From: Mytilus trossulus
Lineage: Eukaryota
DNA: 64,000 bases
NCBI RefSeq assembly: GCF_036588685.1
Contig: NC_086381.1
Location: 32,364,001-32,428,000 of the forward strand
Reading direction: 5' to 3'
The notes below the pieces were generated by a model. It was not told where the DNA came from. It saw only the letters and a list, made by a program, of their open reading frames with translations, and made no database searches. Numbering within the stretch: position 1 is the stretch's first letter; each line of letters opens with the position of its first letter. Shown here in pieces: positions 5,741 through 33,600 of the stretch. The position numbers and the translations under genes were made by a program.

Positions 5741-6716
5741 GTGAATCCGTATAAGGGTTTTTAACTTTAACTTTGGACGTTCGGGATGCTGATGGGTTCT
5801 TATATTTATTTTAGACGCCTTATGTTTTCAGTGTTTTTTTTTATATTTGTATACCCTTTATTTATTCTTTTTTACTTAATGTGTATTTGACACATTCTCC
5901 ATTTCCATTCTCAATTCTTTTTAATGGGAAATAAATTATTTTATCCTACAATAATCACAAAAACTTGTTTGTTAGCATCGTTGTCTGATTTATTTGTATG
6001 TTTGTTTGTGTCGCTTTTCCTGGTATTGTTAAATTTATGGTACGTTTATCCTATTTTGACTATTAGTTAAAAAATATTGTCACGTAAACCTATTATTTCG
6101 GTTGCTCACACAAGACTCAAGAGTTTCGTATGTTAGAATCGCTTGTCAATATCTAGGAACTATAAACAGAATTTAATAACAATTGGCATTCGCAAACTTC
6201 AAAACAGGTACAACCTATGTATTGGTATCTGAAAATGTATGTACTGAGTCAAGAATATGACAATTCTTTTACATTTATTATGTTGACTGATATAGTCGAT
6301 CATAATGCTTTGTTTACATTTTTGTAAAAGACTTCCTATTCTTTTTACACTGTTTGAACTCAACTGCATTGTGCCGAACACATTTTCCACTTTCAAGAAC
6401 CAGATTGATACACAACTGAATGTGTGGGATAGACATAAATGTAGTGTTGAAGTTTGCATGTTGATTCCGGTGTTTTTTTTATCCTATACCAAAAATATAA
6501 ACTACAACAGTACACAAAAGAGAAATTGAAAATAGAGAACAAGGCGAAAATAAAACTAACATAAGTACATTACATAATCAGAAAAGTAAATTGAACCTAG
6601 TTAATAATTCATATTTTATTGATATAAAGTAGTTTAAGAAGGAATAACAAAGATATAAACATGTATTCACTGAACAAAATTAAGAATACACTAAAGAAAA
6701 CGGTTCAACATATTTT

Positions 6717-9700
6717 CTACACGTCTATTTTGTTATTATCTCCACAAATTCCTGATGTCGCCTCGTGGTCACAAAATGAAAACTCGGGTAGCTGCGTCAT
6801 ACACGCAGTTGACCGTTTAAAAATATCTTCATGTCTGAATTCGTAACCAAAATGGATATCAACATTACACATCTCTTGACCATCAGATTCCCTGCAAAAA
6901 AAATCAGCCGTTGTGTTAATGTGGTATGGACATCTTAAGTTTATCTCTCATTTTTGCATATGTGTTTTGTCTTTAGACTGTTTACATGCCAGTTATTTTG
7001 CTATGTTGGCATAATTGTTTGTTTTATAGTGATTCAGATTATAACACAATGTTGACTGATGTACATTACTTATAATATATGTTTGTTTCGTTCGCCCATT
7101 GTTGTTAACATGGTTAATATGATGGAATTGTAACCGACTGTCAAACAAGTGAGATGTTTAGCTAGATGTAAGACGCCATCTTAGCGTAAGAGAATGTCTG
7201 TATCAAGTCATGAATATGAAAACTGTTTTTCCATTCATTTGATGTGATCCTTACGTATTGTTTTAGCAATTTGTTATTGAACATTCTGTTTTTGAATTTT
7301 TCTTGGAGTTCGGAATCATTTGTAATATTATTAGTTTTCATAATTGGTGTAAAATAAACAGGTTCATAGATATAGGGAAAAAATATTGAATAGATACGTT
7401 GCATATTTATTCCGAGAAACAGTTTTTAAGTATGGTTCACTTGCTTTTCACCCATGAATCAACAATATCAAAGTAAATATATCAAACGACATTTTTTAGG
7501 GTGCAGCCAGTGAGGCAGGAATACAAACCCTTTCGGAAAACCTTATCAAGTTCAAACACATTGTTGTCCCTATCCATCTGAATTGAACTTTCGTGCTATT
7601 AAGTATTGTCTGATTTTTTCCGGCTATTATCGATCCATTTGCATTAACGCAAACAATACAGTTAGGTTCTGCTACTACATATATAAAGTACTCAATCTTA
7701 CCCGAATAGAATTGGCTTGTTATCTTTATTAATATACAGACACTTTGCAGCCTATAAATAAAAAAATGTACAGTTAATAGATTTTTTATTTTTTTAATAA
7801 TCGCTTTAAAATTTGAGCTTTTTGTATGATGTAATTACAATATAGGATTTACTTTAAATTGATTATTGTTTTTGTATACAGACACACGTAAGACCGCTGG
7901 TTTTCTTGTTTGAATGGTTTTACAAAAATTATGTTGGGGCCTTCTATAGCTTGCTGTTCGGTGTGAGCCAAGACTTTGTGATGTAGACGGTACCTTGACC
8001 TATCATTGTTTACTTTTTACAAATTGTACATTGCGTGGAGATTTGTTTAATTAACACTTATATCAAATTTACTTATATCTATTAACAAAAATCTCATAGT
8101 TGGCTGCTGAAATACAAAAACAAGTGGTCTATTTAGAATAAATGTATGCGTATTGGTCAGTTTCCCTAATCAATGTTATTAGCATATCATATTTCTTACC
8201 AGGACATCTCCATGTCGTACGTCAATTGCCCCTCCAGGTACTGGTAATAACACCTGTAAAAGGTCAAATGTTTCTTATTGAAATAGATAAAACTGTAATA
8301 AATATAGATGAGCTTTACACATATTTTATATATATCACTGAAAGCTAGATCAGAACGTGTCTTGCTTTTAAATATTTGAAATGGTGTAATTATGATTATA
8401 TAAAAAAGAAGATGTGGTATGATTGCCAATGAGACAACTATCCACAAACGACCAAAATGACACAGACATTAACAACTATAGTCCACCGTACGGCCTTCAA
8501 CAATGAGCCAAGCCCATACCGCATAGTCAACTATAAAAGGCCCCCATAAGACAATGTAAAACAATGATGGTTTAAATGCTTATTAAACTTTATATTAAAA
8601 AAAATGTTACGTATTCGTAAGCAAACCTGAATTTTTAATAACCTTATTCCTTTTTTCTTATTCATGAAATTTCATACAGCCTGAATCTACACATATAAAG
8701 CTATGTACGATCGAATGTGCAAATCTTATTTCATTCATATTCAATATGTTGACGTCAGTTTCTCGATATAAATCTAACATTCAGAACTATCGGATATACA
8801 AAAAGTTAAAGCCGCCATAAGGTTTAATATTTTTTTAATGTACCTTAAGAAAACAAAAATCGGTATATCAAGAACTTTATAGTACCAGTTATTCTCTCTT
8901 GTGCAATATCTGTAAAAATGTCTTTCTTTAGTTCGGAATATTGTTTTACTTATATTTGAATGTTTCTGTTTAATTTATTTACCATTTTTTTTCCAAATTC
9001 GGGATGATTTACAGTTTGGCATATTGGACACATGTCTATTGTTCATGTCTGTGTCGTTCTCTCTCTATATATTTTTGTTATTGTTGGCATTATGTTGCAT
9101 ACAAAGCGAAGTTCACCTCACGTTCCCCCCTTATTAATATTGTTTACATTTAGGTTATTCGAATGTTCAATAGAGACGAGAACAAAGTGATAAAATATGC
9201 TTAATTTCAACATTATCTTTGTTACTTTGTGCTTTGAAAGTGATGTCGCATGTGTTCATGTTGTGTTTATGATGATATGACAATCCTGCGTTCTTCTGTC
9301 TTAAATCAGCTGATGAAACTTCTGACTTCCAATTGTAAAATTGAGAATGGAAATTGGGAATGTGTCAACGAGACAACAACCCGACCATAGAAAAAAACAA
9401 CAGCAGAAGGTCGCTAACATGTCTTCAATATAGTGAGAAATTCTCGCACCCGGAGACGTCCTTCAGCTGGCACCTAAAAAAATATATACTTCTTAAGTGA
9501 TAATGAACGCCATACTAATTTGTTGAAGGTTTATTATGAGGTAAAAGATCTAGATTTATATAGGATCCTGAAAGATCTCTTAAAGAACGGAATATTGTGA
9601 GATCCTTGCAAACGGTAGTTTAGTGATATTGGTTTTAATATATCTGTATACACAACTAACCTTAGTTTGGCCTTGTGTTAACTGACTCGCCATTAAGGTC

Positions 9701-12700
9701 CAAGTACCGTTTCGAACTCTATACATTTCAGCCAAATATCCTGTTTAAAATACAATTTTAAAAATAAATTTGCATATAGAAATCACTTCAGAATCTACTA
9801 TATTTTACCATTAATAAGCATAATTCCAGCAATATTGGTTTTACCCTAGACAACAGAATGGACCGGAGTGTATTCTTCAGGTTACTTTAGATAAGAGAAA
9901 ACATGAAGTAACGATAACTGATGTTTCCTTGCATGGTCAAACTTTACAACAAAACGCTACAAATTTGTCTTTTGCTTTATATTTATTGAAATAAACTGAA
10001 TATGTATGATCATTGAAAAGTGTAACATAATGCAAGCTCTACTAATACTTACCATAATGATGTGTATGTAATTGAACAGCAAATGCAACAACATCAGGCT
10101 TACTCCAGCGACAAGCTGTTTCCGCAAAATATCCTACATCAAAATTAATATGCATGTATCTATAATTTATTAATATGTCATAGGTCTTGCTGAAGGGAAT
10201 CAAAAATAGTAAGTTTTTGTGAATGTGCTATACTTCAGTATAAATTATTAGCAGTATAAAATTTCAGAGATGTGGTAGCATTATCAATGAGATAACGAAA
10301 GTTGTAAAGGAAATGGATCGAAATATTACTAAGAGATTATCAACTTCCACAGTTAGAAGAAAAAAGAAGATGTGTTATGATTACTAATGAGACACCTCTA
10401 CAAGAAACCAAAAAGACACATATATAAAAACTATCGATCACTGTTCGACCTTCAACAATGAACAAAGACCATACCGCATTGTTAGCTATAAAATACTGCC
10501 AAATGACAAGTTTTCAACAATTCATTCGTCATATATATGCATATCTTTCCTGTGTGATTATGTTCAAGTAATCGATGTTGACTTATAAGAGGAAAAGCCA
10601 AACAAATTACAAATACATCAACAAAGAGCTCATATCACACTTAAAATAAACTTACAGGTAGAAATAAAATAGAAGCATCATTTTGTTTTAGAGAGCGCAA
10701 AAGCTGTAGGACGCAGCGTATTTCCAAAAAGTAGAACATATACATTTTCAGTCAAGAAAAATTTAAACAAACATTTTCCTTTACATCACGACAAAATTAA
10801 GACGATAGAATAAACGTACCCTTTTCCTTATTGGCGGGAATAAATCCTTCAGTCAACAGTAAATGAGTTTGGTAGTTATATTTGGTGCTGAGTGATAAAA
10901 ATAAAGTGTACATTAGTGTGAAGGAATTATCAACAAGAACAATATTATAAATATTTGTTTCCTACCCTTATCGTTTACCATTAAAAGTGATATTGACAAG
11001 GAACTTTCAGCAATTCTATTTTTCAACATACCATTTACCTCGATACATTATCTATCTATTTTATTAGAAGTTCAAGATAAGAACCACTACTACAAGGGGT
11101 AAAAGTCTGGTCTATTGTTCTTTCGTTTATGTGTTATTCTGGATGTGCTGTTGTTATTCCTTTTTTAATTCGAAATTGAAAGTAATAATTAACGATGTCT
11201 TGTTCATTTCAGCCATCAGTATTATTCAAAATCAAAATAAAGCTGGATTGTACAAAACAAACTTATAATAAGTTAATTTTAAGTAGTAGAATACATCAGA
11301 TGCTCAAGTTAATGAAGATAGTAATATGATATTTGACATATTTGTGTTTTAAGTAATTAAATTACTTACGGAGTTCTGGTAAATGTTAACGTTACATTCA
11401 CTAAGGGATAATGAAAATCTGAAATAAACGTCACAATTAATCAAACATTATTAAATCAAAGATCATTCGCTTTACCGTTAGATATGTGTTATTTCTATTA
11501 ATTAGTGAAGATTAACTCAAATGTTTGTCTATAAAAGGGTACGACCGTAATTACATGTAAACTGTTCGTGTTTACGAAATATTAAACATATGCTTAAAAA
11601 TCATTTGTTTAACTTTATTCGAAATTGACTTATTGATTGATGGAATGATGGATTGGTGTTTTATGTCCGGTGACAAGTATTGATGTTTGTTAAAGATGTG
11701 AACAAATTATATAGGTATCTGTTGTATTAGACATTTGGCATGCCACTTGAAAATCAGTATAGACTGGAAAAAGAAAGAAATTTGGTCGAGCAATAGGCAA
11801 AAGCCGACTAAATGCAACCCTGTGTATCGTAACATGTGTAACGTCCTTATTTAAACAACCGTTTATAGAATTCATTTGCTACTAATAAAGATAACCTTCC
11901 AAAATACAATTGTTCTCCTATTTTTTTTTACTCCAATTAAAACTAGCAAGTAAATGAAAATCACAAAAATACTGAACTCAGAGGAAAATTCAAAAAGAAA
12001 AAATCACTTATCATTAGTACACTATTTTCATTATGGAATATGAAAATAGTACAACAACACTTTTGTATACCTGTCACTGCTGCTTTAGCGTGCATCTCAA
12101 AAGTAATATGCCTCATTAGGGTGGAAAATCCGACTTTAAGTGATACGTCTGAAAAAAAAAGAAAAGCAATATGAATAAAAATAAAGTAACGAATAATTAT
12201 AAAAAATAATTGTATAGTGTTGGCATTTTTGTGTTCAAACAAATCCCTTAATATGCTCGACTACAGTCATATTGGGTCGATGATAATTATAGCTGAATTG
12301 GCTCCAGGCGACGACACATACTAGTTAGGCCTTTTTCAACTGATTTTTTTTTAGTTTGTTCTTATGTTGTATTGTTATACCACTGTTCAAGGTTAGGGGG
12401 ATGGTTAAGATTCTGCTAACAAGTTTTACCCCGCCATATTTAGTATGTATATGTCCTAAGTCAGGAGCCTGCAATTCAGTGGTTGTCGTTTGTTGATGTG
12501 TCACATATTTATTTGTCATTCATTTTGGTGTACATATGTGTAAATAATGCCGTTAGTTTTCTCGTTTTGAATTGTTTTACATTTGTCATTTTGGGGCCTT
12601 TTATAGCTGACAATACGGTATAGGATTTAATTTACATGTACGAAAACACATAAGACTAAAATTAGACTAATACATGACTAATTATTAACTTACTGTGTTA

Positions 12701-15700
12701 ATTGGTATTTAAATACATGTAACATCATATAACCCCTAAACTTAGTAATGTGAGGCGCATGGCCGTTATTTACCTTTAGGAAACGTCATTAAACCATCTT
12801 CAGGTTTGTAGTAGTCATCAAATATCAAAACGCTTACTGCCCCACCTTTGCAATATTTTCTGTTCTCCGTACATTCCCTACAATAATGTTTGAAATATGT
12901 CATAAAGGGTTATTTTTTTGTAATAAGAATCAGTTAACAATCAATATGCATATGTACTTGAATTATTGAGTTTGTAATGATGTCAATGTTTTCTAACCAC
13001 GAAAAGAATATCAAAATTAAATTGTAGTGTTGTAATTATTTTTCGTTTTTTTTCTCTTAAAAAACAGTGTATAAAAAAAAAAAATCCGGCGCATACTAAG
13101 ACTATCTAATGAAAAAAAACGGTATCATTTTTAAAGAATTCTATATAGATATTATTTATATTGAAACTCATTTTATCCATTTTTATTTTATATTAATGTG
13201 CATTGGATGATAGTCATGCAGTAGTTTACATAAGAGGAAACGATGGTTGTCCGTCGGAAGGGGACGATAAATGGCTGACCCGTGTTATTAGAGAGCCATA
13301 TCTCTTGCACGTTTAAGACACCCTTGTAGATTTCGGAAAAGAACAGGCTAATGCCGCTACAAGGCAGCACTCGCACTCGGAAAGTGAAAAGGTATTAATA
13401 TAAGTTTCAAAAAACTTGTTTCCCAATCCACTATAAATAAATATGTTTAAACTTAACTAGTAATTTACAGTTGTCTCTTCTGATCTCAAAATAGTCCTGC
13501 GGAAATCAATACAATTTTACTCATGATAAATCATTTTTTTAGTAGTTAATAAAAAATGTTTTGTTAATTGAATACATATTTTGTTTTTAAAAATGTCCAG
13601 ACTGAAATATCTTACCATGGTCGATGACTTGCATTATCTTCAAGTTCTTCACAAAAACTTAAAGCTGCATGATGTACATATTCATGATTAATTTCAATTA
13701 AGGTGCTCACTGAAAGGTATAAAATCATTTACATAATAGTAATTGAGGTCTGTAATTGAAATTTTGGAGTTTATTTGAATGTATACGGTGACGAAACTTG
13801 GTCTCAAGATGTTAATTTGATGGATAATATAGGACCAACATCAACATTATTTTTCATTCTAAAGCAAAACTAATTTGGCGATCCTTTCAAGTATAGTTGA
13901 CATTAGACAGATTAAATCATTTGCCCGAGAAAGGCCATTTTATGTGTAATCATTAATTTGATAACTGCCATTTTTGTTTAAATTGTTTGCTCGAGAAATC
14001 CCATATCTGGCTACTGACATTATTCTTGGGAATACCAAGTAATTTTCAATAGGAACGTTGCAAGCATCCATATGATTATTTTGAAAAGGTGAACAAATCT
14101 ATTGTATTGAAACTGAAGATGTATTTACTCGTGTCTTCAATGATATGCAGAACGTTATATTTTGACAATAATCAAGGATTTTGGTCATTTTTCCAATATA
14201 TTCTCGGCACCTCATCTATTGATCTAGTACTTACAGACATATACTTCGTCCAGTTCTTCTAAATATCTTGTGTAGCAAAAATATTGGTCGGGCTTCAAAA
14301 AAGGGTTAAATAATACAGTTAATCGTTATAGACGTAGACAGATACCAACGGAATGCAATTCGTTTCACAAAAAAAAACGTTAAGGTGGCTCGTGGGTACA
14401 AAAATTTTAGCAAAAAATTAAACCTTTATTTTGTCATTACAAATTTTATTTATTACACTTTTAGTTGTAACTTTATGATATGGTACAAAAAAACAACCCA
14501 AAAAATGATTTGGTTTGGCCCCAAATGATTTTAAAAATTGAAAAAGCTCCAAATTATCTCCCTTTGGTGCAAAAATGCCATTTTTTGGCCTTAAATTTGA
14601 AATATCTTTTTTAACTCATCGGTGACCTATATTTTTTATTATTATTTTCAAATTAGCTGTACATAAACTACATAATTGTAAAATTTAAGCGATTTCTTAT
14701 ATTAGATTATTTTTTTATTTCGATATTTCCTCTTTTTCTCCTATTAGTTCAACAGAAAAAAAGGACATTAACAAAAATGTATGCTTCTTCCAGAGGCAGA
14801 TTTTAGCTTAAATGAACGGTGACTCCATTTTTTTATTTCATTTTTTTTTTAAAGTATATGATAAAGTTCATTTATGAAAAAATATAGCGAAATCCTATAT
14901 TAGAAAAAAAAACAACATTTATACCCAGGAGCCCCCTTAAATGTACAAAATGTAGTAAGTCTTATCAAAATTTTAATATCATAAGTTATACTATGTGTGT
15001 TTCGCTACTGACCCCCTTCGGACCCAAATAGGGTTAGTAGAATCCCCATGAATTTAATTCACCCTCTATGGATACGTACGGGGTCAGTAGTTAACCTATA
15101 ACGAATTTATCGCACGCTAGACTTTATCTACTGCGTTTTGTTGAAAAATAAACAATGAAACACAACAACATCAATAAATGACGTCACCATTAACTCGTCT
15201 TGAACCCCCTATGAAATTTACTACCCCCTACGGTCTCATATGGTGTCACCACGTGACGGCATTTAACCATGCACAACGTGATAATTTACCCGGGGTGCGA
15301 TAATGTGAAATATGGACCTTAATCGCTAAGTGAATAAAAAAGGCAACAGTAGTATACCGCTGTTCAAAACTCATAAATCCATGGACAAAAAACAAAATCG
15401 GGGTAACAAACTAAAACCGAGGGAAACACATTAAATATAAGAGGAGAACAACGACATAACATTCAAATGTAACACACACAGATGTAAACTGTTATACATA
15501 TTTGAATTTGAAATTTTGAATACATCAAAAGGAAAATATTATATTTGAACTATAAATTTAGACTTTTATTTTTAGCAACGATATTTAATTAAATAAACTC
15601 ATCATAGATACCATAATTGAAATTTTATATTTGCACCTGACGCGCGTTTCGTCTTCAAAAGACGCATCAGTGACGCTCAACTAAAAAAATGTCAAAACGG

Positions 15701-17294
15701 ACAAACAAAGAACGAAGGTGAAGAGTATTGTTTCGACATATCTTGTATAACGTTTAACCCTTCTAAAGATCGTAAGTAGGATAGAAATGAGATTCTAAAT
15801 TCACACCTGTGAGAAAATAATCACAATCTTATCAATAGATATAGTTTTAAAAGACACCTTGTCCATTGTAAACTATTGTTGAATTCATCATAGATATACT
15901 TAATATTTAATTTAAGAGTAAGAATGGGCAAAATTGTTACTAGCGCAATGTCAGGTACCCTATGAAAATTATATTACGGATAATTGGCTTTTTAATAATA
16001 ACCATCTCGATAAAGGCTGAGCTTTATACCTAAGTAAGGCTTCTGAATACGTGCATGTTAGTACTTTCATTTCTTCAACCCTTTCATGTTGTTTTGCAGA
16101 CATTATTTTTAGTTGTCCGAACCAGTTTGCATATATTAACATAATAATAATGAAAGATGTGGTATGATTTCTTATAATAAAACTCTCCACCATGGAACAA
16201 TGGAATTGAATTAACAATGATAGGTCATCGTACGGGCTTCAATATTAAGCGAAATCATCTGAAATACCAACGTTACCCCTTGACAGTTGCGTTCTCTGTC
16301 ATTGAATGGGTTCCTGGCCTGATTTGATGATATCAAGCTAGTAAGTTAAGTTTAATTATCAAGTGACAATCGTCTTTAAATATGTCAGAATGTTGTTTTC
16401 TTAGCTGTTGAAACGAATTAACTGTAGGCCAAACACCTTTTATTGTGCACTGCTGTTTTATAATTATATTTTGGAAGAATAATGAGGTTTTGATTTTGCC
16501 ATTTGAACAGGGACCTTCAATTTAGATTTTTTTCTTGGGAGTTCCGTATTTTTTATATTTAATTCTTACACATAACGACAAAGAAAGTTCAAACGTATCA
16601 TATTTTTAATCGTTAAAACAAAGTAGTACCTACTTCATATATCTTGATAGATGGGTATGATAGCTTCATTTTATAAACTTCTTGTCCATTCTCTCCATAA
16701 TGAGCTGTTATATATGGTATCTCCCTCACACCTGATACTACAAACAAATTAGATAATGATTTGACAAGCCGAGGTTTGACAGAATTTAGAAATGTTTTAT
16801 CTGAGACAATGGTATGAATACTTTTGACCAGACGTTTCAAGAAAAATATAGTCTAAGATTCAAACCAACATATTATTTCAAACAAAATAAAAGACATTAT
16901 TCTATAATTCATCGCTTTAGAATTTAGACTATCTGTAAAATTATTGTTTTTTCGGCTATGCCGCTTGTGTGCAAAATTTCCTTCAGTATAACGTGGCTAG
17001 ATTCCAAAATGTTCACCTGATAAGTTACAGCTATGTAATTTTCTTCGGTTTTATCGGGAATTGAATTTAGTAAATAGTAAATGAAATACAATTAGAGTCA
17101 GAAAACAACTTCTGAAACTCAATAGATGTAAATATAAAACCATGCGACGGACACTTAAATTTTTTTATTCACCCTAGGCTAAGCCCTATTCTGTATATAC
17201 ATGATTATGCTGGGCTTGAAATAAAAATTATGTATTATTAGAAATTCTTACCTGCAACAGGTAGAACAAAAAGCCACATAGCGAATTTATTCAT
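6717..17294 (-). CDS. Secreted PHM-like copper type II ascorbate-dependent monooxygenase, paralog A (13 exons, 345 aa)
   Basis: Exons 17294-17252, 16737-16634, 14292-14235, 13709-13616, 12877-12774, 12148-12071, 11418-11370, 10887-10820, 10133-10053, 9740-9661, 8253-8200, 7751-7702, 6891-6717. All introns GT-AG, phases compatible, 1038 nt, no internal stop. Signal peptide MNKFAMWLFVLPVAVSG, then PDQYFC, YVHHAALSFC, FEMH, AFAVQLHTHHYG, YRVRNGTWTL, GDVLAAKC, EMCN. These align with rat PHM DTYFC, TVHHMLLFGC, LQVH, FAYRVHTHHLG, YRVRNGQWTL, GDILAARC, EMCN. AATAAA on the minus strand at 6615-6620. Confidence 0.92.
8400..8565. repeat. Representative copy of the abundant AAGAAGATGTGGTATGATTGCCAATGAGACAAC interspersed repeat
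   Basis: Related copies near 1720-1990, 7890-8080, 10365, 12325-12620, 26010, 31375, 33185, 38100, 44520, 45060, 53150 and 53608. Confidence 0.8.
13225..13450 (+). mobile_element. SINE body fragment (conserved central-domain type) in a PHM-like A intron
   Basis: GTCCGTCGGAAGGGGACGATAAATGG..GCACGTTTAAGACACCC..GAAAAGAACAGG resembles Deu/Meta-type SINE cores; no tRNA head visible. Confidence 0.4.
14384..14936. mobile_element. Non-autonomous TTAA-targeting DNA transposon (Kolobok-like) in a PHM-like A intron
   Basis: TTAA on both sides; imperfect TIRs GGTGGCTCGTGGGTACAAA and TTTATACCCAGGAGCCCCC. Confidence 0.65.
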
Positions 17295-18548
17295 ATTTAG
17301 ATAGTCTGACCAAACGTTCAGTTTAACCAATATGAAATGTTTGAAAAATATTGTTTTCTTTAATACGTTCTGGAAAATGAGTTTCGAGAAATGCGCATCC
17401 TTTTTTTTGATACGCAAAAACTGAAAACAATACAGGACACGAATTAAATCATTGTTTACCTTAGATACAAATGTGATAAAAATAGAACATGAAAACGAGA
17501 ACATCAACAATAAACAAATTCATCAATGTCAAACTTACGAAATAAGTTACGACTACGATAGCATGTTGTTAGGGGAGACTCTGTTGTATTAGAAAATATG
17601 ATAGCTCTCACGTTATAGTTTCTAATTCTGGTATACATGATATATAATCGTTTCGGTTCAATTAATATTTTAGAAACAATATATTAAAGATTTCAATAAG
17701 AAAAAAAACCCTTCAGACATAGATTGGGATTAGAACTATTTATGTTCGATATTACATATCGAGCACCTTTTAATTTGCAATATTGTTTTCGGCTAAATTG
17801 TAGCACCCAAGTCTGAATTGATCACAGCTTAATGAGCACAAAATATAAGAAACAAATTAAACACTAAACAAAAACTGTGTGTTGAAATGTCACGAATACA
17901 ATAAAAGTACTTTACCCAAATCATCGACTAACTACATAGCTTTATTTATGTTCATATACAGTATTTTCGAATAATAAAAAAAAGATGACAATGCTGTCCT
18001 GAACTAGATACTAGTTTTGGTAGGCCTTATACATACTGTTTTGCAGATACAAAAAGTTATTGCGATGAAAACGGCAGTTGGAGCTATAGCTATCTGTACC
18101 ATGTTATATTGGACAAAATACAAAAGCGGGAAACTACATGCTCAGGCGAAATAACCTTTAGACTTTTAAATACAGTTGTCAAAAAGTATTATTATCACAT
18201 GTCTTAAAATGTTAGATTAATTATCATACTTAAGAACATTGTCCGGTAACTAGGATGTCGGTTGTTGTCAACAACAGTAAAAAGGGAAGTCGTTTATGAT
18301 TGTAAACAAAAACAACACCAAGCAATAAATCAAAGCTTTACTATTTCGTAGAACCATACGATTAAAATTTCACAGAAATACTTAAACACCTTATGTGTAA
18401 TTTATCATCATGTTTATATCCGTATTTTTTCGGTCGAAACTTTGTATATATAGGTATAAACTTTACCATTATTGTTCATAATCAACATATCAAGACAAAC
18501 AGTGTATTGTGACTGATTTAACATTGCTTTTTCTCTACTGTCTCTACT
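17295..18548. promoter_or_regulatory. Divergent (head-to-head) intergenic region shared by PHM-like A and the prepropeptide gene
   Basis: ATG at 17294 (-) and ATG at 18549 (+) point away from each other about 1.25 kb apart; TATAAA at 18455 for the + gene. Confidence 0.55.
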
Positions 18549-21500
18549 ATGTCTACCATGAATTCCAGATCACTACTTCGTTTTTGTTCCATTCTAATTT
18601 GTAAGTATATTTTGACTGTCTTTTTCCATGATTACTAATAAAAATAGAAAAAATACAAATTAAAAGAAAAAATAATAATAAAAAAAATGTTTATGTTATC
18701 TAAAATACTCTGAAAGTTTATTTTTTATTTTTATATCAGTTACTCTCTTTTACTAATACAATTTTTTCTATGTCATATATTTTACTGTTTTACAAATTTC
18801 TACTGATCCTTTCTTGCAAATCCTTATGATGATAATACTTTTCCAATTAACGAAGTTGTACCACACAGCGTATTCCGTTTCGATATTTGTGGAAGGATCC
18901 AAATCCAACGGAGCTTTAAAAGTTTGTAAGAGTGGGTATTCTAAATCTTTAACATTACCCCGTAACGTAACTCCTCCGTTAGAATCGTATCCAGCTTTTA
19001 AGTAACCATCGTTACAAACTTTTGATTGATTGATCTTAGGGGTAGGGATATAGAAACACCCAGTGAGCTATCTCAGTGTAACTGTTACATTTCAAACGGT
19101 AATGTTAAATAATTGTATAGGTCTTTCTGTAAACGCACACAATTGCCTGTCACTGCTTTATGCATTTAGCTACAACACCTCGTTATTGTGTATAATTATA
19201 TATAAGGATTTATATTTCTTTGCTTAATATTGCCATTGTAGTAGCAAGTATTCATGGTCACCTCTTTTAGAAGTCTATCTTTTAAAAAACTGAAAACAAA
19301 TCTAATTAGGTCCTATTTTGTAACTAAATTAAAACAAAACGAAGATGTGTTATGACCGATAATAAAGCAACATTCAACAAGAAACTAACAATGAGTAGAG
19401 TAAATACCTTTTTCGTGAACTCACTTATGATCCCTGACTTTTTATAGGTTAGACAATACTTGGTCATGTTTTATGAAGATCCAGACCAAGGCGAAGCCAA
19501 GGGCTTAAATCTTCATAAAACATGACCACGTATTGTCTGACCAATTTAGAACATATTCACACTTTCGAGTGACCTTTCACAATTATACTTTCCCATTGTA
19601 ATAGTCAAACGTAAATAAGAGTTCACTTTTTATAATGAATTAAATGTAAAACATAGGTACTGATCATTTCTATGGATGAAATGAAATAGCACTCGTTTTA
19701 CTTCTGCTTCAGGTGAAATTTAATACTTATATATATTTATATTTTTTTATTTTAAAAAACAACACAATGTTATATGAATCCCCTTTTTATTTTTTTTATT
19801 TTTTTATAAATATAAAACTCTCTTTGTGAATTTTTGAATTCAGACCATTCAACATTAAATCCTTACTTTTTATTGATAAATTTAAATGTATTATGTTTCT
19901 CCGATAACAATCCTTTGCTTTATATATCAGCAGTCTAGCATTGTGTTTTTTTTTTAATGTAAGGTATATAAATTAAATAAATATCATTTTATTTATCCTT
20001 ACCATTTTTTTTGTGTATTCTATATATGTGTACTATAAGAAAATGCATGAAATTTTCCAAAATTCAAAATATTTTTTATTTTAATCTTTGCTCTTTCATC
20101 TTTAATGGATTTGTAGACTATTTTCCCAATGATATTGCTTTAGGGGATTGTAACCTTCGTTAGTGCAGTTCATAATTAACTGACAATGAAAAGTCATACA
20201 TGTATAACATTTCATAGTGCATAGAAAACCATGTACTATGAAAATTAGAGAAAAAAAAAACCCTGACTTTTCATTGGACGAGAAGGGATGAGTATGTTCT
20301 AATAAATGATAATGTTTGGGCGTTTCCAAATAAGAGTTCTCAAGACAAAACGGTAAAAACGAACAAAATTATAAAACGATTATTTCATTTAGTAGCACTG
20401 GTACTGGTGCGGCATCGGTTTCTTTTCAAAATATTAAGAAATCATCTATAAACTAAGGTCAATTTCCATCAGGCAAGCATGGCCGTATTTCAATTTCTAT
20501 CCTTTTTTTGGTCATATAGCTCAAAACAATTTACGAATATATGCATTCCTGGCGTATAAATGTTTAGGTTTAGGCGTTCCTAATTAGAAAAATCGACAAA
20601 ACTCTTTTTCTTTTATAAAATTAGTACTTTTTAATTTTTTTAAGATAACTCATACATACATATCATATGTATAAATATAACAGCAATTTAAGATTTGGAC
20701 TCAAAGTTTGAAATGGAAGTTTCGTACTTGAATTTATATATTAGGGACATATTCTGAATAGTTCTTGTTCATCATTATTTTAACCGTTATTGTAATCTTC
20801 TATTTTTTCAATCAGATAACAGATAATTGAATGTTTAAGTTATTAACCAGTACACAGTCTTTTTAGTAATGACTAATATTTCCAAATATGGATCTGCAAA
20901 CTTTAATTAAACATTTTTTTTTTAAAGTTTACCATAGCATGTGACGGTATATTCATACTAAATATTTACAACATTTATTATCAGGCTATATTTTTTTCAG
21001 TTGTTATACTTGCTGTTAACTCTGTTCCCCTGAGTTCAGAATATGATTTAAGGGAAAAGAGAGAAGCTGTTCCGTCCGTTAAAGCCGTTAACGTAGATTT
21101 GGAAGATGGTTTGAGAAAGAAACGTGAAGCTGTACCGTCTGTCAAAGCCGTCAACGTCGACTTAGAAGATGGTTTGAGAAAGAAACGTGAAGCTGTACCG
21201 TCAGTCAAAGCCGTCAATGTAGACTTAGAGGATGGTTTGAGAAAGAAACGTGAAGCTGTACCGTCTGTCAAAGCCGTCAACGTCGACTTAGAAGATGGTT
21301 TGAGAAAGAAACGTGAAGCTGTACCGTCAGTCAAAGCCGTCAATGTAGACTTAGAAGATGGTTTGAGAAAGAAACGTGAAGCTGTACCGTCTGTCAAAGC
21401 CGTCAACGTCGACTTAGAAGATGGTTTGAGAAAGAAACGTGAAGCTGTACCGTCAGTCAAAGCCGTCAATGTAGACTTAGAAGATGGTTTGAGAAAGAAA

Positions 21501-22124
21501 CGTGAAGCTGTACCATCTGTCAAAGCCGTCAACGTCGACTTAGAAGATGGTTTGAGAAAGAAACGTGAAGCTGTACCGTCAGTCAAAGCCGTCAATGTAG
21601 ACTTAGAAGATGGTTTGAGAAAGAAACGTGAAGCTGTACCGTCAGTCAAAGCCATCAACGTCGATTTAGAAGATGGTTTGAGAAAGAAACGTGAAGCTGT
21701 ACCATCTGTCAAAGCCGTCAACGTCGATTTAGAAGATGGTTTGAGAAAGAAACGTGAAGCTGTACCGTCTGTCAAAGCCGTCAACGTCGATTTAGAAGAT
21801 GGTTTGAGAAAGAAACGTGAAGCTGTACCGTCAGTCAAAGCCGTCAACGTTGATTTAGAAGATGGTTTGAGAAAGAAACGTGAAGCTGTACCGTCAGTCA
21901 AAGCCGTCAACGTTGATTTAGAAGATGGTTTGAGAAAGAAACGTGAAGCTGTACCGTCAGTCAAAGCCGTCAACGTCGATTTAGAAGATGGTTTGAGAAA
22001 GAAACGTGAAGCTGTACCGTCAGTCAAAGCCGTCAATGTCGATTTAGAAGATGGTTTGAGAAAGAAACGTGAAGCTGTACCGTCAGTCAAAGCCGTTAAT
22101 GTCGATTTAGAAGATGGTTTGTGA
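18549..22124 (+). CDS. Secreted multi-copy prepropeptide (2 exons, 391 aa): signal peptide plus 17 x EAVPSVKAVNVDLEDGL separated by R-K/E-K-R convertase sites
   Basis: Exon 1 18549-18600 (ATG to phase-1 donor GTAAGT at 18601), 2400-bp intron, acceptor TTTTTTTCAG ending at 21000, exon 2 21001-22124 in frame with the 63-bp repeat ORF. Spliced N-terminus MSTMNSRSLLRFCSILIFVILAVNS-VPLSSEYDLREKR-EAVPSV... TATAAA at 18455-18460; AATAAA at about 22439 and 22464. Confidence 0.88.
19447..19542. repeat. Inverted-repeat hairpin in the prepropeptide intron
   Basis: 34-bp arms GGTTAGACAATACTTGGTCATGTTTTATGAAGAT and ATCTTCATAAAACATGACCACGTATTGTCTGACC around GGCGAAGCC. Confidence 0.65.
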
Positions 22125-24910: not shown

Positions 24911-26816
24911 ATATCCAATATTTCATTATTCGTTAATCTAATAATTCACTGTTTGCATTCGTAGTTTTTTTTACTAATTTATATTAGATATTCACAAAGA
25001 GGTCAGATAAGGCATGCACATGTTTACAAAATTAAGATATCAGTATCAACATTTCTGTTACTTACACGTTTGCTTAAGTTACTTTTTAAAACAGAAATGA
25101 AGTATATATTATATATTTTATGACCGAAAATGTTTTTTTGGAAAAGGTGAAAATTGTCGATATCAGAAAAACGTAATGGGCAATAAGACTGGAAGGAATG
25201 TGTGAAACGGCAAAAGAGGACATGGAAGGGTTTGCAATGCCGACCAGATACACACAGAACAGTCATAGACATTTGCGCTGGCAATAAGGTCATGTTTTAA
25301 CTTTTTCTATTACTTGTACATGCTGATCCTTGGCATATTGGCAAGAGATTTACACCAAATTACAACTTGCAATTTGTCGTAACTGGACATTTTTTCTACG
25401 AAGTTGTACGCTTCAATAAAACATTTAATTGGAGTTTTCTACTCTCAAATGTTTACCAATAAGATGTTTGGTCGATATATGAATGGATAACAAATATCAT
25501 ATACAACAAAAAACGATAACCCCTCCAGGCTACAAAACATGTGAAAGTCATACTGTTTATGATAGAAGCAATTACCTGATCAGATACAAAATATATATAT
25601 CAACAAATAAAGGCAACAATAGTATACCGCTGTTCAAAACTCATAAATCCAGGGACAAAAAACAAAATCGGGGTAACAAACTAAAACCGAGGGAAACGCA
25701 TTAAATATAAGAGGAGAACAACGACCGAACACTGAAATGAACACACACAGAGGAGGACCAAGCACTAGACAAAATCCCACGAGAACAACAAATATCGACA
25801 AGTACCGTGACACGTCTTATCGCAATTTGAATTTTCACTCAAAAATAAGAGAAAACAAACGACGCAACGTCAAAATGTAAAACACACAGAAACGAATAAT
25901 AATATAACAATGAACACAGACAAAATTGTTCTATCATAATTATGATATTAGTTGATTACTCTCAACTATATTTGAAATCGTTTGTTTGTTGTTGTTCGAA
26001 TAATATATAAAAAGAAGATGTGACATAAGTGCTGAGGAGACAACTCACCAAAAGAGACGGCATAGTTATAAAAGGCCCCGAAATGACAATGAAAAAAATT
26101 TAAACGAGAAAACTGACAATTACCATGCATACATATTACTCATTGTCATGGTTTGGCTTAACATATGGTCATTTTTGGTTTTATCAGCTTTTAAACACTT
26201 GTTTTTGGTTATCTGACAATTGCAGATAACAGCAAGACAATAAAAATCAAAACTAAGGACATAAAGACTCATACAACCAAACCACATTTACATCAACAGT
26301 TATAAAAGATAAATAAGAATCAACATGAACTCCACTAAAAACCAGGAGTAAAATCAGGTGCTCCGGAAGGATAAGCATTTCCTGCACCGTATACGGCACC
26401 CGTCGTGTTATTTCTTTGGTATGTTCGGTAATGATGGAGGGTTATAATGACCGAGGAAGAATATCAGATATGATTGCTTTTCCTAGATTTTGATATTTCA
26501 GTTTTGCATTGTGTAGGACAAAAATCAATTAGTGTAGTCTATGTATAAGTTGAGATTTCGTTACATCAAATTGCGCAAAACCTCACAGGAGGGTTGATCT
26601 CTGCCAAGCATGCTTATCCCGATCACATTATTAATGTGCCTCCCAGTGATATCACACTACTGTAAATGAAACTACTTTAATAAACAGAATAAAAAGAAGC
26701 GTCACATTTGAGTGTCATTAAGTCACAAGACACATATTTGATAAAATGACGCAACGAAGGTCGTTAAATTTATGAGTCATTACGTCATTGGACACAGATT
26801 GTAGACAATATAGATC

Positions 26817-27415
26817 AACACAGACTTGAGAGTCATGATGTCAACACCGACTTGTGAGTCATGATGTCAACACCGACTTGTGAGTCATGATGTCAACACA
26901 GACTTGTGAGTCATGATGTCAACACAGACTCAGAGTCATGATGTCAACACAGACTCAGAGTCATGATGTCAACACAGACTTGAGAGTCATGATGTCAACA
27001 CAGACTTGAGAGTCATGATGTCAACACAGACTTGTGAGTCATGATGTCAACACAGACTTGTGAGTCATGATGTCAACACAGACTCAGAGTCATGATGTCA
27101 ACACAGACTCAGAGTCATGATGTCAACACAGACTTGAGAGTCATGATGTCAACACAGACTTGTGAGTCATGATGTCAACACAGACTTGTGAGTCATGATG
27201 TCAACACAGACTCAGAGTCATGATGTCAACACAGACTCAGAGTCATGATGTCAACACAGCCTTGAGAGTCATGATGTCAACACAGACTTGTGAGTCATGA
27301 TGTCAACACAGCCTTGAGAGTCATGATGTCAACACAGACTCAGAGTCATGATGTCAACACAGACGCAGAGTCATGATGTCAACACAGACTTGAGAGTCAT
27401 GATGTCAACACAGAC
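26817..27415. repeat. 25-26-bp minisatellite, about 23 copies
   Basis: ACACAGACT(TGA/TGT/CA)GAGTCATGATGTCA units. Confidence 0.95.
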
Positions 27416-30668: not shown

Positions 30669-33600
30669 TTATCTATCACAAACAGCTGCTGTCTTGTCGT
30701 TACTGCAGAAGGTGAAATCCGGTGAGTTCGAAATGCAGCCAGGTGGACGGGCAAAATACTCCTGGTATTGTATGTCATATGCAATACTCAGCTGGAATAT
30801 ACAGGTATCTTCTGACCTAAAAATAATTAAACAGTCATTGTAATTGAAAATAAATTTGACAAATACATATTTGCAATAAATCAAACACGGCGACTGTACT
30901 TATCTATTCAATGTAAAAATCGCATTCGCCAGCACTTATATATATATTGTAGATATAAAATTATATGTTATTCGGGTCTCAGACGGGGTATATACTGTGA
31001 CATTGCCAGCACATAGTTTATACCCCTGATCCGGGAATGTCGCTCTGCACTCATATTGAATTTACTGACCCCGTTTATATCATATAAGGTCACTAACACA
31101 CTATGTAACTAATAATATAGTCGTAAAAAGTGCACCAGCGTAGATGCATATATTAATAAAATGAATAGTAAGATAAGTAAAAAAAATATTTTGAAATTGT
31201 TAATGATAAATGGATATATATCCATCTCTCTACAGTATATATTAAAAGTTTTTTCGTTTAATTCATCAATTTTGTTAGCTGAAGTCACCAGTAACGTACG
31301 AATGGTCCGATGTATTCATGTTATTGCAGGTTTTGATATTACTATAGTTTGAATTAACTTTTTACCAGAAATATAAAAAGAAGATGTGGTATCATTACCA
31401 ACTAGACAACTCTCCACAATAGGCCAAAGTGACACAGACGAATATAAATTTCTTTGTGATTATCAGTTAGCCATCAGGCGAAAAATTAGGATTGTTACCA
31501 GGTCAAAGAGCAAATATTTTTCGCTGTTCATATTTTTAGTGTTAGGATCCATCGTGTAGTGGGTTGTTACCTTCAATTGCCACACTATAATCCACAGTTT
31601 ATCTGATTTAGTTCTAGATCTGTGACACTCATCTTGTTTTTAATTTGAGTTTTTGTGCATGAATAATAAAGACATGCAACTCTCTTCTTATTGTCAGCCC
31701 ATTTATACTTACTTAAGATCGATCGTTTTCCCTTCGTTATTGATAAACAGACAACGTGAAGCCTGCAATCAAAATCACAAAAATAGTCACAGTTGTCAAT
31801 TTAAAAAAAAGTAAAAAGGAACAAGCTGTATGCAAAACTAAATTCCGAGAACACTAAGCGAGGTACTGTAACTGAATATCTTTCATTTGAAACAAATAAG
31901 GATGCAAATATTAATATTTTCTGAACCAATCTTAATAAAAAAAAATACGAAGAAGATAACCACAGTTATTGAGATAACGTTATCAGGGTAATTTTGAAGT
32001 CGTGATATTAAGACTTTCAGAAAAAAAAATACCGAATTCCGAGGAAAAATTAAAACGGAAACTACGTAATCAAATAGCAAAACCAAAAGCTCAAACACAT
32101 CAAATATATTGATAACTGTCATATTCCTGACTTGGTACACGCATTTTTGTATTTAGAACTAGGTGGATTGAACATGTAGCTAGCTAAACCTTTTACTTGT
32201 ATGACAGTCACATCAAATTCCATTATATTGACAACGATGAGTGAACAAAACAACCAGACATAACAGGTAAAAATGTAAAAAAAAAAAGGATACAACAGTC
32301 AACATCGTGATATAATCCTAATCACTTTACAAAACAAACAAATATGTAACAAAGACGCACAAAAAGGCATATATCAAATATATCAAATGTATTCATTGCT
32401 TTTTTATTATTCGACTTTATCTATGTATGTTAACTCTTTCCATGAAGGATTGAAAGATTTGTAGTTTTGGGATTCAATAACCATTACAGGCTCATGGTAA
32501 GGTTAACATTTAGTAGAATATAGAATCGAGCGTTTCAGATGTGGTATGATTATCAGTTGATTAACATGTAAACGTCACACAGGTAGAAACAAAATAAATT
32601 TGTCGTTCAAGGATCTTTCCGATTTGAATTTTCAGTGTTTTGTGATTTTACATTTTAAACAAATTTATATGCTTCATATGGTAGGAGTAAACTTGCTTTT
32701 ATTCGACTTGGAATCATTATGGGACTTGTTTTGTCTTCAAAATTAAGTTGTCATTTAACCGTTGAAGTTTCTACCAAAAAAATAGTTTCATGACTGTTTT
32801 AAAGTGAAATAAAAGAGAATATATTAATTCTATCATCAAATTAATAACTCATAATACTTACTAAAACGTCACCAGGTCGTATTTCTATCGGTCCGTTTAC
32901 GATATCATACCATACCTAAAGATAAAAAGATTTATCATATGTTTTGACATATTAAACAAAACATGTGGCTAAAATAACTCTATACCATAAAGGTAGCGAT
33001 TTACTTGTATAATTAGTGCGTTTTGTACATATAACTTGTGTTTTGCTTAAAATAATTCAGAAGATCAAAAGCAAATTAAAAAAAATGAAACAACACAAAA
33101 CAAAACACCAAGATGAATCATTAAATTATAAAACCCCAATCTAGTAACTATCTTGAAAATCCTAAAACATTGTGACGAGAAAATAGATACAGGAAGATGT
33201 GGTGTGAGCGCCAAATTGACAACTTTCCATCCAAATACATAAAAAAGTAAACCATTATAGGTCAAACACCGTTTTAGAATAAATTATTTGTCTCTGAATT
33301 TGCGAAAAAAATGTAATCACAATCTAATAATGGTAGTTTTGTGTTTTATTGTAAAACTGTAAACAATATAGCAAATGTATAGCTCGTGCATACATACTTA
33401 TTTATAACTATTTCAAAATGAGATTTTCATACTTAGTAAAGTGTGCGATTATCCACTTCCTGTCATATTTATTTAAAAAAAAAAAGTGCAAATGTGTTAC
33501 ATGTGAAATAATTCTTGAACATATGCTATGTTTCGGAATTTTTACATTCTGTCTTCTTTTAATGGCATAACATTCTATATATCAATATCTAAAAAAAAAA

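What the first reader, a model, noticed from the sequence alone, without database searches (positions are those of the whole stretch)
6717..17294. PHM-like A keeps all six copper ligands but has lost the peptidylglycine-binding residues
By motif alignment to rat PHM, H107/H108 (VHH), H172 (EMH), H242/H244 (HTH), M314 (EMCN), Y79 and N316 are retained. R240 is Q (AVQLHTH vs AYRVHTH), Y318 is D (EMCNVD vs EMCNLY) and Q170 is E. R240 and Y318 bind the substrate C-terminal carboxylate in PHM. No PAL lyase or transmembrane segment follows. This predicts an active oxygenase with a new substrate, possibly basic or internal given the acidic substitutions (the core has one Lys).
Basis: partly seen in the sequence, partly recalled or inferred. 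Interest (0 to 1): 0.8.

Follow-up and report, generated by a model that had tools for sequence, protein, structure and literature searches.

The report
Mussel PHM-like oxygenase, altered substrate pocket
A mussel gene encodes a secreted copper enzyme built like the peptide-amidating enzyme PHM that keeps all its copper-binding residues but has lost the residues that grip a peptide's terminal glycine, and each copy of it sits head-to-head with a gene for a many-times-repeated small peptide that may be its real substrate.

Summary
Window 6717-17294 (minus strand) is a 13-exon gene of Mytilus trossulus. Its product is identical to RefSeq XP_063399192.1, a 345-aa "PAM-like" protein. Seven introns are confirmed by spliced contigs from four public runs.

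Against rat PHM (E 2e-25; Foldseek TM 0.65-0.76) it keeps Y79, H107, H108, H172, H242, H244, M314, N316 and four of five disulfides. It reads Q for R240, D for Y318 and E for Q170. It ends 50 residues after the CuM Met, with no PAL domain and no membrane segment.

The same genome has two canonical PHM genes that keep R240, N316 and Y318. The gene belongs to a bivalve clade (Mytilus, Saccostrea, Mya) in which no aligned member that covers those positions has R240 or Y318. Three M. trossulus paralogs share the exon plan, with dN/dS of 0.26-0.35.

New here: each of the three paralogs lies head-to-head with a 63-bp-repeat gene encoding (EAVPSVKAVNVDLEDGL-RKKR)n. Among 79 units there are 263 synonymous and 39 non-synonymous changes.

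Best reading: an active copper oxygenase with a non-glycine-terminal substrate, with the neighbouring peptide as the leading candidate. Activity and substrate are untested. This scan had not reported it on other DNA.

The parts
17252..17294 (-). Gene A exon 1: ATG and signal-like hydrophobic N-terminus (MNKFAMWLFVLPVA)
   Evidence: Exact threading of P0022; the top Kyte-Doolittle windows are all at residues 3-8.
16634..16737 (-). Gene A exon 2
   Evidence: Exact threading of P0022 with GT-AG borders.
14235..14292 (-). Gene A exon 3; holds Y53 (rat Y79) and C55 (rat C81)
13616..13709 (-). Gene A exon 4; CuH ligands H81 and H82 (rat H107, H108) in YVHHAALSFC
12774..12877 (-). Gene A exon 5; C102 and C109 (rat C126, C131)
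12071..12148 (-). Gene A exon 6; FEMH with E152 (rat Q170) and CuH ligand H154 (rat H172)
   Evidence: the donor at 12071 is confirmed by the spliced joint 11418/12071.
11370..11418 (-). Gene A exon 7 (linker between the two domains)
   Evidence: Both borders are seen as joints in the run contigs; threading.
10820..10887 (-). Gene A exon 8 (start of the C-terminal domain; hydrophobic pocket LLL aligned to rat L206-M208)
   Evidence: Joints.
10053..10133 (-). Gene A exon 9; AFAVQLHTHHYG with Q220 (rat R240) and CuM ligands H222 and H224 (rat H242, H244), plus C207 (rat C227)
   Evidence: Joints.
9661..9740 (-). Gene A exon 10 (YRVRNGTWTL, shared with rat PHM)
   Evidence: Joints.
8200..8253 (-). 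Gene A exon 11
   Evidence: Joints.
7702..7751 (-). Gene A exon 12; C275 (rat C293)
   Evidence: Joints.
6717..6891 (-). Gene A exon 13, coding part: QEMCNVD with M295 (rat M314), C296, N297 (rat N316) and D299 (rat Y318); family-specific C328 and C337; stop TAG at 6717-6719
   Evidence: Acceptor joint.
6600..6716 (-). Gene A 3' untranslated region with AATAAA near 6618
   Evidence: Sequence read; a run-X2 contig covers 6601-6890.
17295..18548 (.). 1.25-kb divergent intergenic region between the start codons of gene A (minus strand) and the repeat-peptide gene (plus strand)
   Evidence: Coordinates. The blocks 17244-17537 and 18170-18624 are 76% and 70% conserved at the older paralog locus A3.
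18549..18600 (+). Repeat-peptide gene, predicted exon 1 (MSTMNSRSLLRFCSILI, donor GTAAGT at 18601)
   Evidence: Sequence read. The splice is predicted from GT..AG and frame only; it was not checked against RNA.
21001..22124 (+). Repeat-peptide gene, predicted exon 2: end of the signal peptide, VPLSSEYDLREKR, then 17 units of EAVPSVKAVNVDLEDGL+RKKR; the last unit ends EDGL-stop
   Evidence: TRF finds a 63-bp period, 17.1 copies and 0% indels. ORF. Across 79 units, 268 of 304 differences fall at third codon positions, with 263 synonymous against 39 non-synonymous changes in this frame.

Best explanation
Gene A encodes a secreted protein consisting of the PHM core only. It belongs to a bivalve-specific offshoot of the peptidylglycine alpha-hydroxylating monooxygenase lineage.

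Both copper sites are intact: CuH is H81/H82/H154 and CuM is H222/H224/M295. So it most likely still carries out ascorbate- and O2-dependent C-H hydroxylation at CuM (inferred).

The clamp that fixes a C-terminal glycine carboxylate in PHM, R240 and Y318, is replaced by Gln and Asp. The backbone-binding Asn (N316) and the hydrophobic pocket are kept. It is therefore predicted to bind a peptide-like substrate whose target carbon is not a free C-terminal glycine (inferred).

The leading candidate substrate is the peptide EAVPSVKAVNVDLEDGL. It is released from the head-to-head neighbour gene by cleavage at RKKR. Its conserved -Gly-Leu end would put a glycine one residue in from the carboxylate (speculative).
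For: Shown here:
- Exact 13-exon threading of XP_063399192.1.
- Spliced contigs in four runs, and no intronless copy in the genome.
- Cu2_monoox_C at 59.7 bits against a cut-off of 23.
- Rat PHM at E 2e-25 against human DBH at 4e-4.
- AF2 model with pLDDT 83 and pTM 0.79. Its best PDB matches are all PHM, TM 0.65-0.76.
- All six copper ligands, N316 and four of five PHM disulfides are present; R240->Q and Y318->D.
- No aligned clade member that covers those positions has R240 or Y318, while the HH, H, HTH and, in A-type, EMC motifs persist in Mytilus, Saccostrea and Mya.
- Canonical PHM genes with AYRTHxH and EMCNFY exist on C4.
- Paralogs A, A2 and A3 have identical exon lengths and dN/dS of 0.26-0.35.
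- The A and A3 lineages are each kept in M. edulis, M. galloprovincialis and M. trossulus.

For the candidate substrate:
- The 63-bp array lies upstream of A, A2 and A3, and occurs nowhere else in that form.
- It is about 90% conserved between the A and A3 loci, where flanking non-coding DNA is 70-76%.
- There are 263 synonymous against 39 non-synonymous changes.
- The final unit of the A and A2 arrays stops right after Gly-Leu.

The role of R240, Y318 and N316 is taken from PMC12164859.
Against: - No activity data exist.
- The N-domain Pfam score is under its cut-off (25.9 against 30 bits).
- dN/dS of 0.26-0.35 is rather relaxed for an enzyme.
- I could not inspect the model's coordinates, so a compensating Arg, Lys or Tyr is not excluded. 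One candidate is the family-conserved R314 in F-x-R.
- The gene adjacency was copied by segmental duplication, so three loci are not three independent observations.
- Diverged relatives of the peptide gene at C9:31.307-31.310 Mb have no PHM-like neighbour within about 20 kb.
- Expression of the peptide gene was not tested, and no database protein matched it.
- The peptide is net acidic, which does not fit an acidified pocket.
Confidence: 0.55

Rival explanations
1. It is still a peptidylglycine alpha-hydroxylase. Other residues, or a looser pocket, hold the glycine carboxylate, and the clade is simply a secreted extra amidating enzyme.
For: - Overall it is closest to PHM.
- N316 and the hydrophobic pocket are kept.
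- Oyster P0007 and Logan P0010 carry Lys or Arg two places earlier on the same strand (rat position 238) and Tyr or Phe at position 240, which could re-create a clamp.
- A family-conserved Arg (R314) exists.
Against: - Mytilus A has Ala at 238, Gln at 240 and Asp at 318, so neither the original nor the shifted clamp is present.
- Two canonical PHM genes already cover amidation.
- The neighbouring peptide does not end in Gly.
Confidence: 0.15
2. It hydroxylates a small cationic molecule, such as an amine like the DBH and TBH substrates, rather than a peptide. The neighbouring peptide gene is unrelated.
For: - The strand reads A-x-Q-L-H-T-H. Human DBH and the mussel TBH-like gene read ASQLHTH, so both have Gln at the R240 place.
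- Two neutral-to-acidic changes, Y318D and Q170E, face the cleft region.
Against: - It has no DOMON domain.
- DBH is a far weaker match than PHM: 22 against 92 bits and TMt 0.40.
- N316, a backbone contact in PHM, is kept, whereas the DBH-like genes of this genome have hydrophobic residues there.
- The genome already holds many DBH-like genes.
Confidence: 0.15
3. It is a non-catalytic protein, such as a copper-binding or structural secreted protein, or a slowly decaying duplicate.
For: - dN/dS is moderately high at 0.26-0.35.
- The adjacent B paralogs have lost the CuM Met.
- The N-domain Pfam score is below threshold.
Against: - All six ligands are retained in every A-type sequence across three or more Mytilus species, and in oyster.
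- The frames are intact and the exon plan is identical in three paralogs.
- Spliced transcripts are present at appreciable depth.
Confidence: 0.1

Closest known systems
Rat/mammalian PHM catalytic core (PAM residues about 42-356; PDB 1PHM, 1OPM, 1SDW)
   Same: - Two-domain beta-sandwich fold (Foldseek TM 0.65-0.76).
- 25-26% identity.
- CuH His3 and CuM His2Met sites, N316, E313, and four of five disulfides.
   Different: - R240->Q, Y318->D and Q170->E.
- The C47-C186 disulfide is lost, and a new C-terminal Cys pair (C328, C337) is gained.
- Three extra residues lie between the Met and the last shared Cys.
- There is no PAL domain, membrane anchor or cytosolic tail.
Canonical PHM genes of the same genome (C4:88.03-88.05 Mb and C4:89.115-89.124 Mb)
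   Same: The same superfamily and the same ligand motifs: VAHHM, QVHY, HxH, EMC.
   Different: - They keep AYRTHxH (R240) and EMCNFY (N316, Y318).
- Gene A is too diverged from them for exon-level hits at E<=1.
Human dopamine beta-hydroxylase (PDB 4ZEL) and the DBH/TBH/MOXD-like genes of the mussel
   Same: Copper type II monooxygenase fold and ligands; Gln at the R240 place (ASQLHTH against AVQLHTH).
   Different: - The match is much weaker (E 4e-4).
- DBH has a DOMON domain and a dimerisation domain.
- The DBH-like genes here read EMC-[ILVF]-[SAG]-[YF], that is, no Asn at 316 and an aromatic at 318.
Kex2/furin-processed multi-core precursors next to their tailoring oxidases (fungal RiPPs such as ustiloxin). 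This comparison comes from my own knowledge and was not tested here.
   Same: A secreted precursor with many identical core copies separated by dibasic sites, placed beside an oxidising enzyme gene; the pair is duplicated together.
   Different: - This is an animal genome.
- The enzyme is a PHM-type two-copper monooxygenase.
- No modification has been shown.
- Relatives of the precursor exist without such a neighbour.

Membership tests
Copper type II ascorbate-dependent monooxygenase superfamily (Pfam PF03712 + PF01082) | C-terminal domain HMM above the gathering score | tested here: met
   P0022 scores 59.7 bits against a cut-off of 23, E 3e-16.
Copper type II ascorbate-dependent monooxygenase superfamily (Pfam PF03712 + PF01082) | N-terminal domain HMM above the gathering score | tested here: inconclusive
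   P0022 scores 25.9 bits against a cut-off of 30, E 1.3e-5, covering profile positions 13-122 of 130. Clade member Mya P0017 reaches 40.4 bits.
Copper type II ascorbate-dependent monooxygenase superfamily (Pfam PF03712 + PF01082) | Two-domain beta-sandwich fold | tested here: met
   AF2 model with pLDDT 83 and pTM 0.79. The top 29 ranks of the Foldseek PDB search are PHM structures, then DBH.
Copper type II ascorbate-dependent monooxygenase superfamily (Pfam PF03712 + PF01082) | CuH His-His...His and CuM His-x-His...Met ligands | tested here: met
   H81, H82, H154, H222, H224 and M295 align with rat H107, H108, H172, H242, H244 and M314.
Peptidylglycine alpha-hydroxylating monooxygenase (PHM, EC 1.14.17.3) | Closest solved relatives are PHM rather than DBH | tested here: met
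   92.5 bits to rat PHM against 22.5 bits to DBH.
Peptidylglycine alpha-hydroxylating monooxygenase (PHM, EC 1.14.17.3) | Arg240 salt bridge to the substrate's C-terminal carboxylate | tested here: not met
   Gln220 (CAA, 10074-10072) in an ungapped alignment. The role of R240 is taken from PMC12164859.
Peptidylglycine alpha-hydroxylating monooxygenase (PHM, EC 1.14.17.3) | Tyr318 contact to the substrate carboxylate | tested here: not met
   Asp299 (GAT, 6860-6858).
Peptidylglycine alpha-hydroxylating monooxygenase (PHM, EC 1.14.17.3) | Asn316 contact to the substrate | tested here: met
   Asn297 (AAT, 6866-6864).
Peptidylglycine alpha-hydroxylating monooxygenase (PHM, EC 1.14.17.3) | Hydroxylation of C-terminal glycine of peptides | not testable with these tools
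   This needs an enzyme assay.
Bifunctional PAM (PHM + PAL + membrane anchor) | PAL lyase domain and transmembrane segment after the PHM core | tested here: not met
   The stop is at 6717-6719, followed by a 3' UTR with AATAAA. The RefSeq product is 345 aa. No hydrophobic window lies outside residues 3-26.
DBH / TBH / MOXD branch | N-terminal DOMON domain and best similarity to DBH | tested here: not met
   Pfam finds no DOMON domain, and DBH is a weak match.
Enzyme-precursor gene pair (RiPP-like logic) | The precursor gene is protein-coding and physically linked to the enzyme gene in every copy | tested here: met
   263 synonymous against 39 non-synonymous changes. Arrays lie head-to-head with A, A2 and A3 only. 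However, the copies arose by duplication, and diverged precursor relatives lack such a neighbour.
Enzyme-precursor gene pair (RiPP-like logic) | Co-expression, and modification of the peptide by the enzyme | not tested

The most novel reading that the evidence does not exclude
The PHM-like A genes and their head-to-head repeat-peptide genes are enzyme-substrate pairs. The altered pocket accepts the conserved -Gly-Leu (or -Gly-Phe) end. The enzyme then oxidises the penultimate glycine, or another residue of the core, to give a modified, for example Asp-amidated, secreted peptide. That would be an animal, genome-encoded, RiPP-like system built on a repurposed amidating enzyme.
Probability: 0.2. 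Interest if true: 0.85.

Novelty: new variant of a known kind. Interest (0 to 1): 0.62.

Why it matters
Only a few substrate classes are known for the two-copper PHM/DBH enzyme family: C-terminal glycine, phenylethylamines and the orphan MOXD enzymes. This is a natural, conserved clade that keeps the catalytic metal sites but rebuilds the substrate clamp. That gives a direct handle on how specificity is set in these enzymes. It also points to an unknown peptide modification in bivalves. The co-duplicated repeat-peptide gene makes the question testable with one recombinant enzyme and one synthetic 17-mer. RefSeq's label 'PAM-like' probably misstates the function of these genes.

Tried and rejected
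- Exon-by-exon Pfam scans gave only one weak hit, E 0.095.
- Six-frame Pfam searches of the whole genome found about 80 exon hits elsewhere and none in the window, because the exons are 16-35 codons long and diverged.
- BLAST of window reading frames against those loci returned mostly interspersed repeats and short motif matches.
- The loci L001-L028 turned out to be DBH/TBH/MOXD-like, not canonical PHM.
- The word-indexed protein search found only Mytilus relatives, even with an alignment as query. It found nothing for the repeat peptide. That blank is weak evidence: the query is repetitive and the search has a length window.
- Literature searches found no paper on this clade or its accessions, and none on a repeat-peptide precursor of this kind.
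- A rooted tree including canonical PHM was not built.
- I rejected the idea that the 63-bp array is a mere minisatellite, because its changes are overwhelmingly synonymous in one frame.
- I rejected a retrocopy as the source of the spliced contigs, because no intronless copy exists in the genome.
Full report
**What is there**

The window is AT-rich animal DNA. It is C9:32364001-32428000 of a 1.3-Gb assembly.

Scanning those stretches one by one against Pfam gave only one weak Cu2_monoox_C hit. Six-frame Pfam searches of the whole genome found many copper-monooxygenase exons elsewhere but none in the window. So sequence-family tools alone could not settle the gene.

**Transcript evidence**

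I laid contigs of four public runs (two organism labels, two studies) on window 6600-12300. This gave seven consecutive joints with GT..AG ends on the minus strand. After adjustment to the canonical dinucleotides, they define these exons:
- 11370-11418
- 10820-10887
- 10053-10133
- 9661-9740
- 8200-8253
- 7702-7751
- 6717-6891

All are in one frame without stops.

The runs are only guessed to be RNA. However, no intronless copy of the gene exists in the genome, so the joined contigs are best read as mRNA.

**How the spliced model was handled**

I searched the model exon by exon and did not send a joined model to any tool.

The last exon alone (57 aa) was searched against the representative protein library. 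That search returned full-length database proteins. One cluster member, P0022 (XP_063399192.1, Mytilus trossulus, 'peptidyl-glycine alpha-amidating monooxygenase-like', 345 aa), threads onto the window without a mismatch. It uses 13 GT-AG exons from 17294 to 6717. All later protein-level work used this database protein or its ortholog P0002.

Inside scripts the exons were strung together only to count codon changes. No joined sequence was printed or typed.

**The residues**

P0002 (91% identical, same length) aligns to rat PHM chains at E 2e-25 over residues 38-312. The alignment has no gaps around the motifs. Human DBH scores E 4e-4.

Rat numbering is chain index +44, checked at Y79, H107/108, H172, C186, C227 and R240. 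In P0022 numbering and window codons:

| Rat PHM | Gene A | Note |
|---|---|---|
| Y79 | Y53 | kept |
| H107, H108 | H81, H82 | kept |
| Q170 | E152 | changed |
| H172 | H154 | kept |
| R240 | Q220 | changed |
| H242, H244 | H222, H224 | kept |
| E313, M314, C315, N316 | E294, M295, C296, N297 | kept |
| Y318 | D299 | changed |

Eight of the ten cysteines match rat C81, C114, C126, C131, C227, C293, C315 and C334. The C47-C186 pair is absent on both sides. Two further cysteines (C328, C337) are invariant in the family.

A review states that the substrate carboxylate forms a salt bridge with Arg240, with secondary contacts to Tyr318 and Asn316. It also places Gln170 on a proposed electron path (PMC12164859).

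The protein ends 50 residues after the CuM Met. A 3' UTR with AATAAA follows. The only hydrophobic stretch is the N-terminal signal-like segment.

**Fold**

An AlphaFold2 model of P0022, built with a 14-sequence family alignment, has mean pLDDT 83 and pTM 0.79. Its best PDB matches are all PHM structures: TM 0.65-0.76 and 25-26% identity over about 305 columns. DBH follows.

I had no access to the model's coordinates.

**Is this the mussel's ordinary PHM?**

No. Two other genes on C4 carry:
- VAHHM(L/N)L(Y/F)GC
- VLQVHY
- (F/I)AYRTH(A/S)H
- DEMCNFYIM

They therefore keep R240, Q170, N316 and Y318. The many strong Pfam hits elsewhere are DBH/TBH/MOXD-like, reading QHAHLLG and EEMC-x-x-[YF].

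**The family**

Gene A sits in a minus-strand cluster on C9:
- three A-type genes: A; A2 at 32.526-32.536 Mb; A3 at 32.575-32.587 Mb;
- interleaved B-type genes that read EDTC instead of EMC.

A2 and A3 are identical to P0021 and P0024. They have the same 13 exon lengths as A.

Pairwise Nei-Gojobori values:

| Pair | dS | dN/dS |
|---|---|---|
| A-A2 | 0.053 | 0.35 |
| A-A3 | 0.45 | 0.29 |
| A2-A3 | 0.52 | 0.26 |

This is purifying selection, though not tight.

Relatives occur in M. edulis, M. galloprovincialis, M. californianus, M. coruscus, Saccostrea cucullata and Mya arenaria. In a midpoint-drawn tree, the A and A3 lineages each contain M. edulis, M. galloprovincialis and M. trossulus. A-A2 is a recent M. 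trossulus duplication.

Across the family the HH, H and HTH motifs persist. A-type, oyster and Mya proteins keep EMCN. No aligned sequence that covers these positions has Arg at 240 or Tyr at 318:
- Position 240 is Gln (Mytilus A), Tyr or Phe.
- Position 318 is Asp, Glu or Gln.

The oyster protein and P0010 carry Lys or Arg two places earlier on the same strand. This might re-create a clamp further from CuM. Mytilus A has Ala there.

**A DBH-like detail**

Human DBH and the mussel TBH-like gene read ASQLHTH. Gene A reads AVQLHTH. So Gln at the R240 place is also the state of the amine hydroxylases. This keeps a small-amine substrate alive as a rival, although everything else about A is PHM-like.

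**The neighbour**

The start codon of a plus-strand gene lies 1.25 kb from A's start codon, in the opposite direction.
- Predicted exon 1 is 18549-18600.
- Predicted exon 2 is 21001-22124.
- Exon 2 holds 17 units of 63 bp, each encoding EAVPSVKAVNVDLEDGL followed by RKKR.

The same array stands upstream of A2 (11 units) and A3 (about 51-53 units). In that form it occurs nowhere else in the genome.

Among 79 units, 268 of 304 differences from the consensus are at third codon positions. In this frame 263 are synonymous and 39 are not. Four of the other five frames give the reverse pattern; one minus-strand frame is also mostly synonymous (221 against 65) but less so than this frame. There are no indels. 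The last unit of the A and A2 arrays ends in a stop codon directly after Gly-Leu.

Between the A and A3 loci the array is about 90% identical, while the flanking non-coding blocks are 70-76%.

The array is therefore a protein-coding, selected, multi-copy propeptide, not a minisatellite. Its splice and its expression were not checked, because the read-laying run was already used.

Two cautions apply:
- The three enzyme-peptide pairs arose by duplication, so they are not independent.
- Diverged relatives of the peptide gene at C9:31.3065-31.3097 Mb (cores VKSVNVDLENGL and SVKSFNVDMVDGF) have no PHM-like gene within about 20 kb.

**Mechanism proposed**

Shown:
- a secreted PHM-core protein with complete copper sites;
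- an altered carboxylate clamp;
- selection and transcription.

Inferred: it is an active ascorbate-dependent oxygenase that does not use a free C-terminal glycine.

Speculative:
- Its substrate is the neighbouring peptide. The conserved Gly-Leu/Phe end would place the glycine one residue in from the carboxylate. That would match the removal of the bulky Arg and Tyr and the retention of Asn316 and the hydrophobic pocket.
- Oxidation of that glycine could end in an amidated ...LED peptide.

**Novelty**

The gene is annotated automatically in RefSeq as PAM-like. I found no paper on the clade, on its accessions, or on a repeat-peptide precursor of this kind. I file it as a new variant of a known kind.

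- Model coordinates could not be read.

Noticed in passing
window 18549-18600 and 21001-22124 (+): A two-exon gene for a secreted precursor with 17 copies of EAVPSVKAVNVDLEDGL separated by RKKR. Its substitution pattern (263 synonymous, 39 non-synonymous) shows it is coding. No database protein matched it.
   Followed up: partly
window 30672-38764 (-): PHM-like B. Residues 104-337 of the B-type protein P0028 are found in nine exons at 75-89% identity. Residues 1-103, which include the HH exon, are not found at E<=0.01. The last exon reads SEDTC, so there is no CuM Met, and Ile replaces N316.
   Followed up: partly
G000 C9:32.35-32.59 Mb: A cluster of at least three A-type and four B-type PHM-like genes, all on the minus strand. 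It includes a recent duplication of the B-A-peptide-B block spaced about 155 kb apart; the block is 96% identical over the 4.6 kb upstream of A and A2.
   Followed up: partly
G000 C9:31306501-31309748 (-), loci L041: Diverged relatives of the repeat-peptide gene. Their cores are VKSVNVDLENGL (spacer RPQNEVAQSTSAVPV, not dibasic) and SVKSFNVDMVDGF. A Val/Gln-rich repeat (VVPVVQTAVKQSK) follows. No PHM-like gene lies nearby.
   Followed up: partly
G000 C2, C1, C27, C13, C10, C7, C6 (loci L001-L028): A large expansion of DBH/TBH/MOXD-like copper monooxygenase genes, many in tandem arrays, for example six or more copies at C2:99.30-99.46 Mb.
   Followed up: no
window 26815-27415: A 26-bp tandem repeat, about 23 copies, with higher-order periods of 128 and 154 bp, lying between the peptide gene and B.
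   Followed up: no
window 8319-8700, 9274-9655, 11948-12138: Intronic stretches of gene A with very high contig depth in all four runs, and many loose ends. They are interspersed repeats that also occur in introns of other copper-monooxygenase genes.
   Followed up: no
window 62736-63131 (-), 52080-52436 (-), 54592-55251 (-): Three open frames: a small secreted Gly/Ser/Arg-rich protein with a clear signal peptide, a C-type-lectin-like fragment, and a reverse-transcriptase-like fragment.
   Followed up: no
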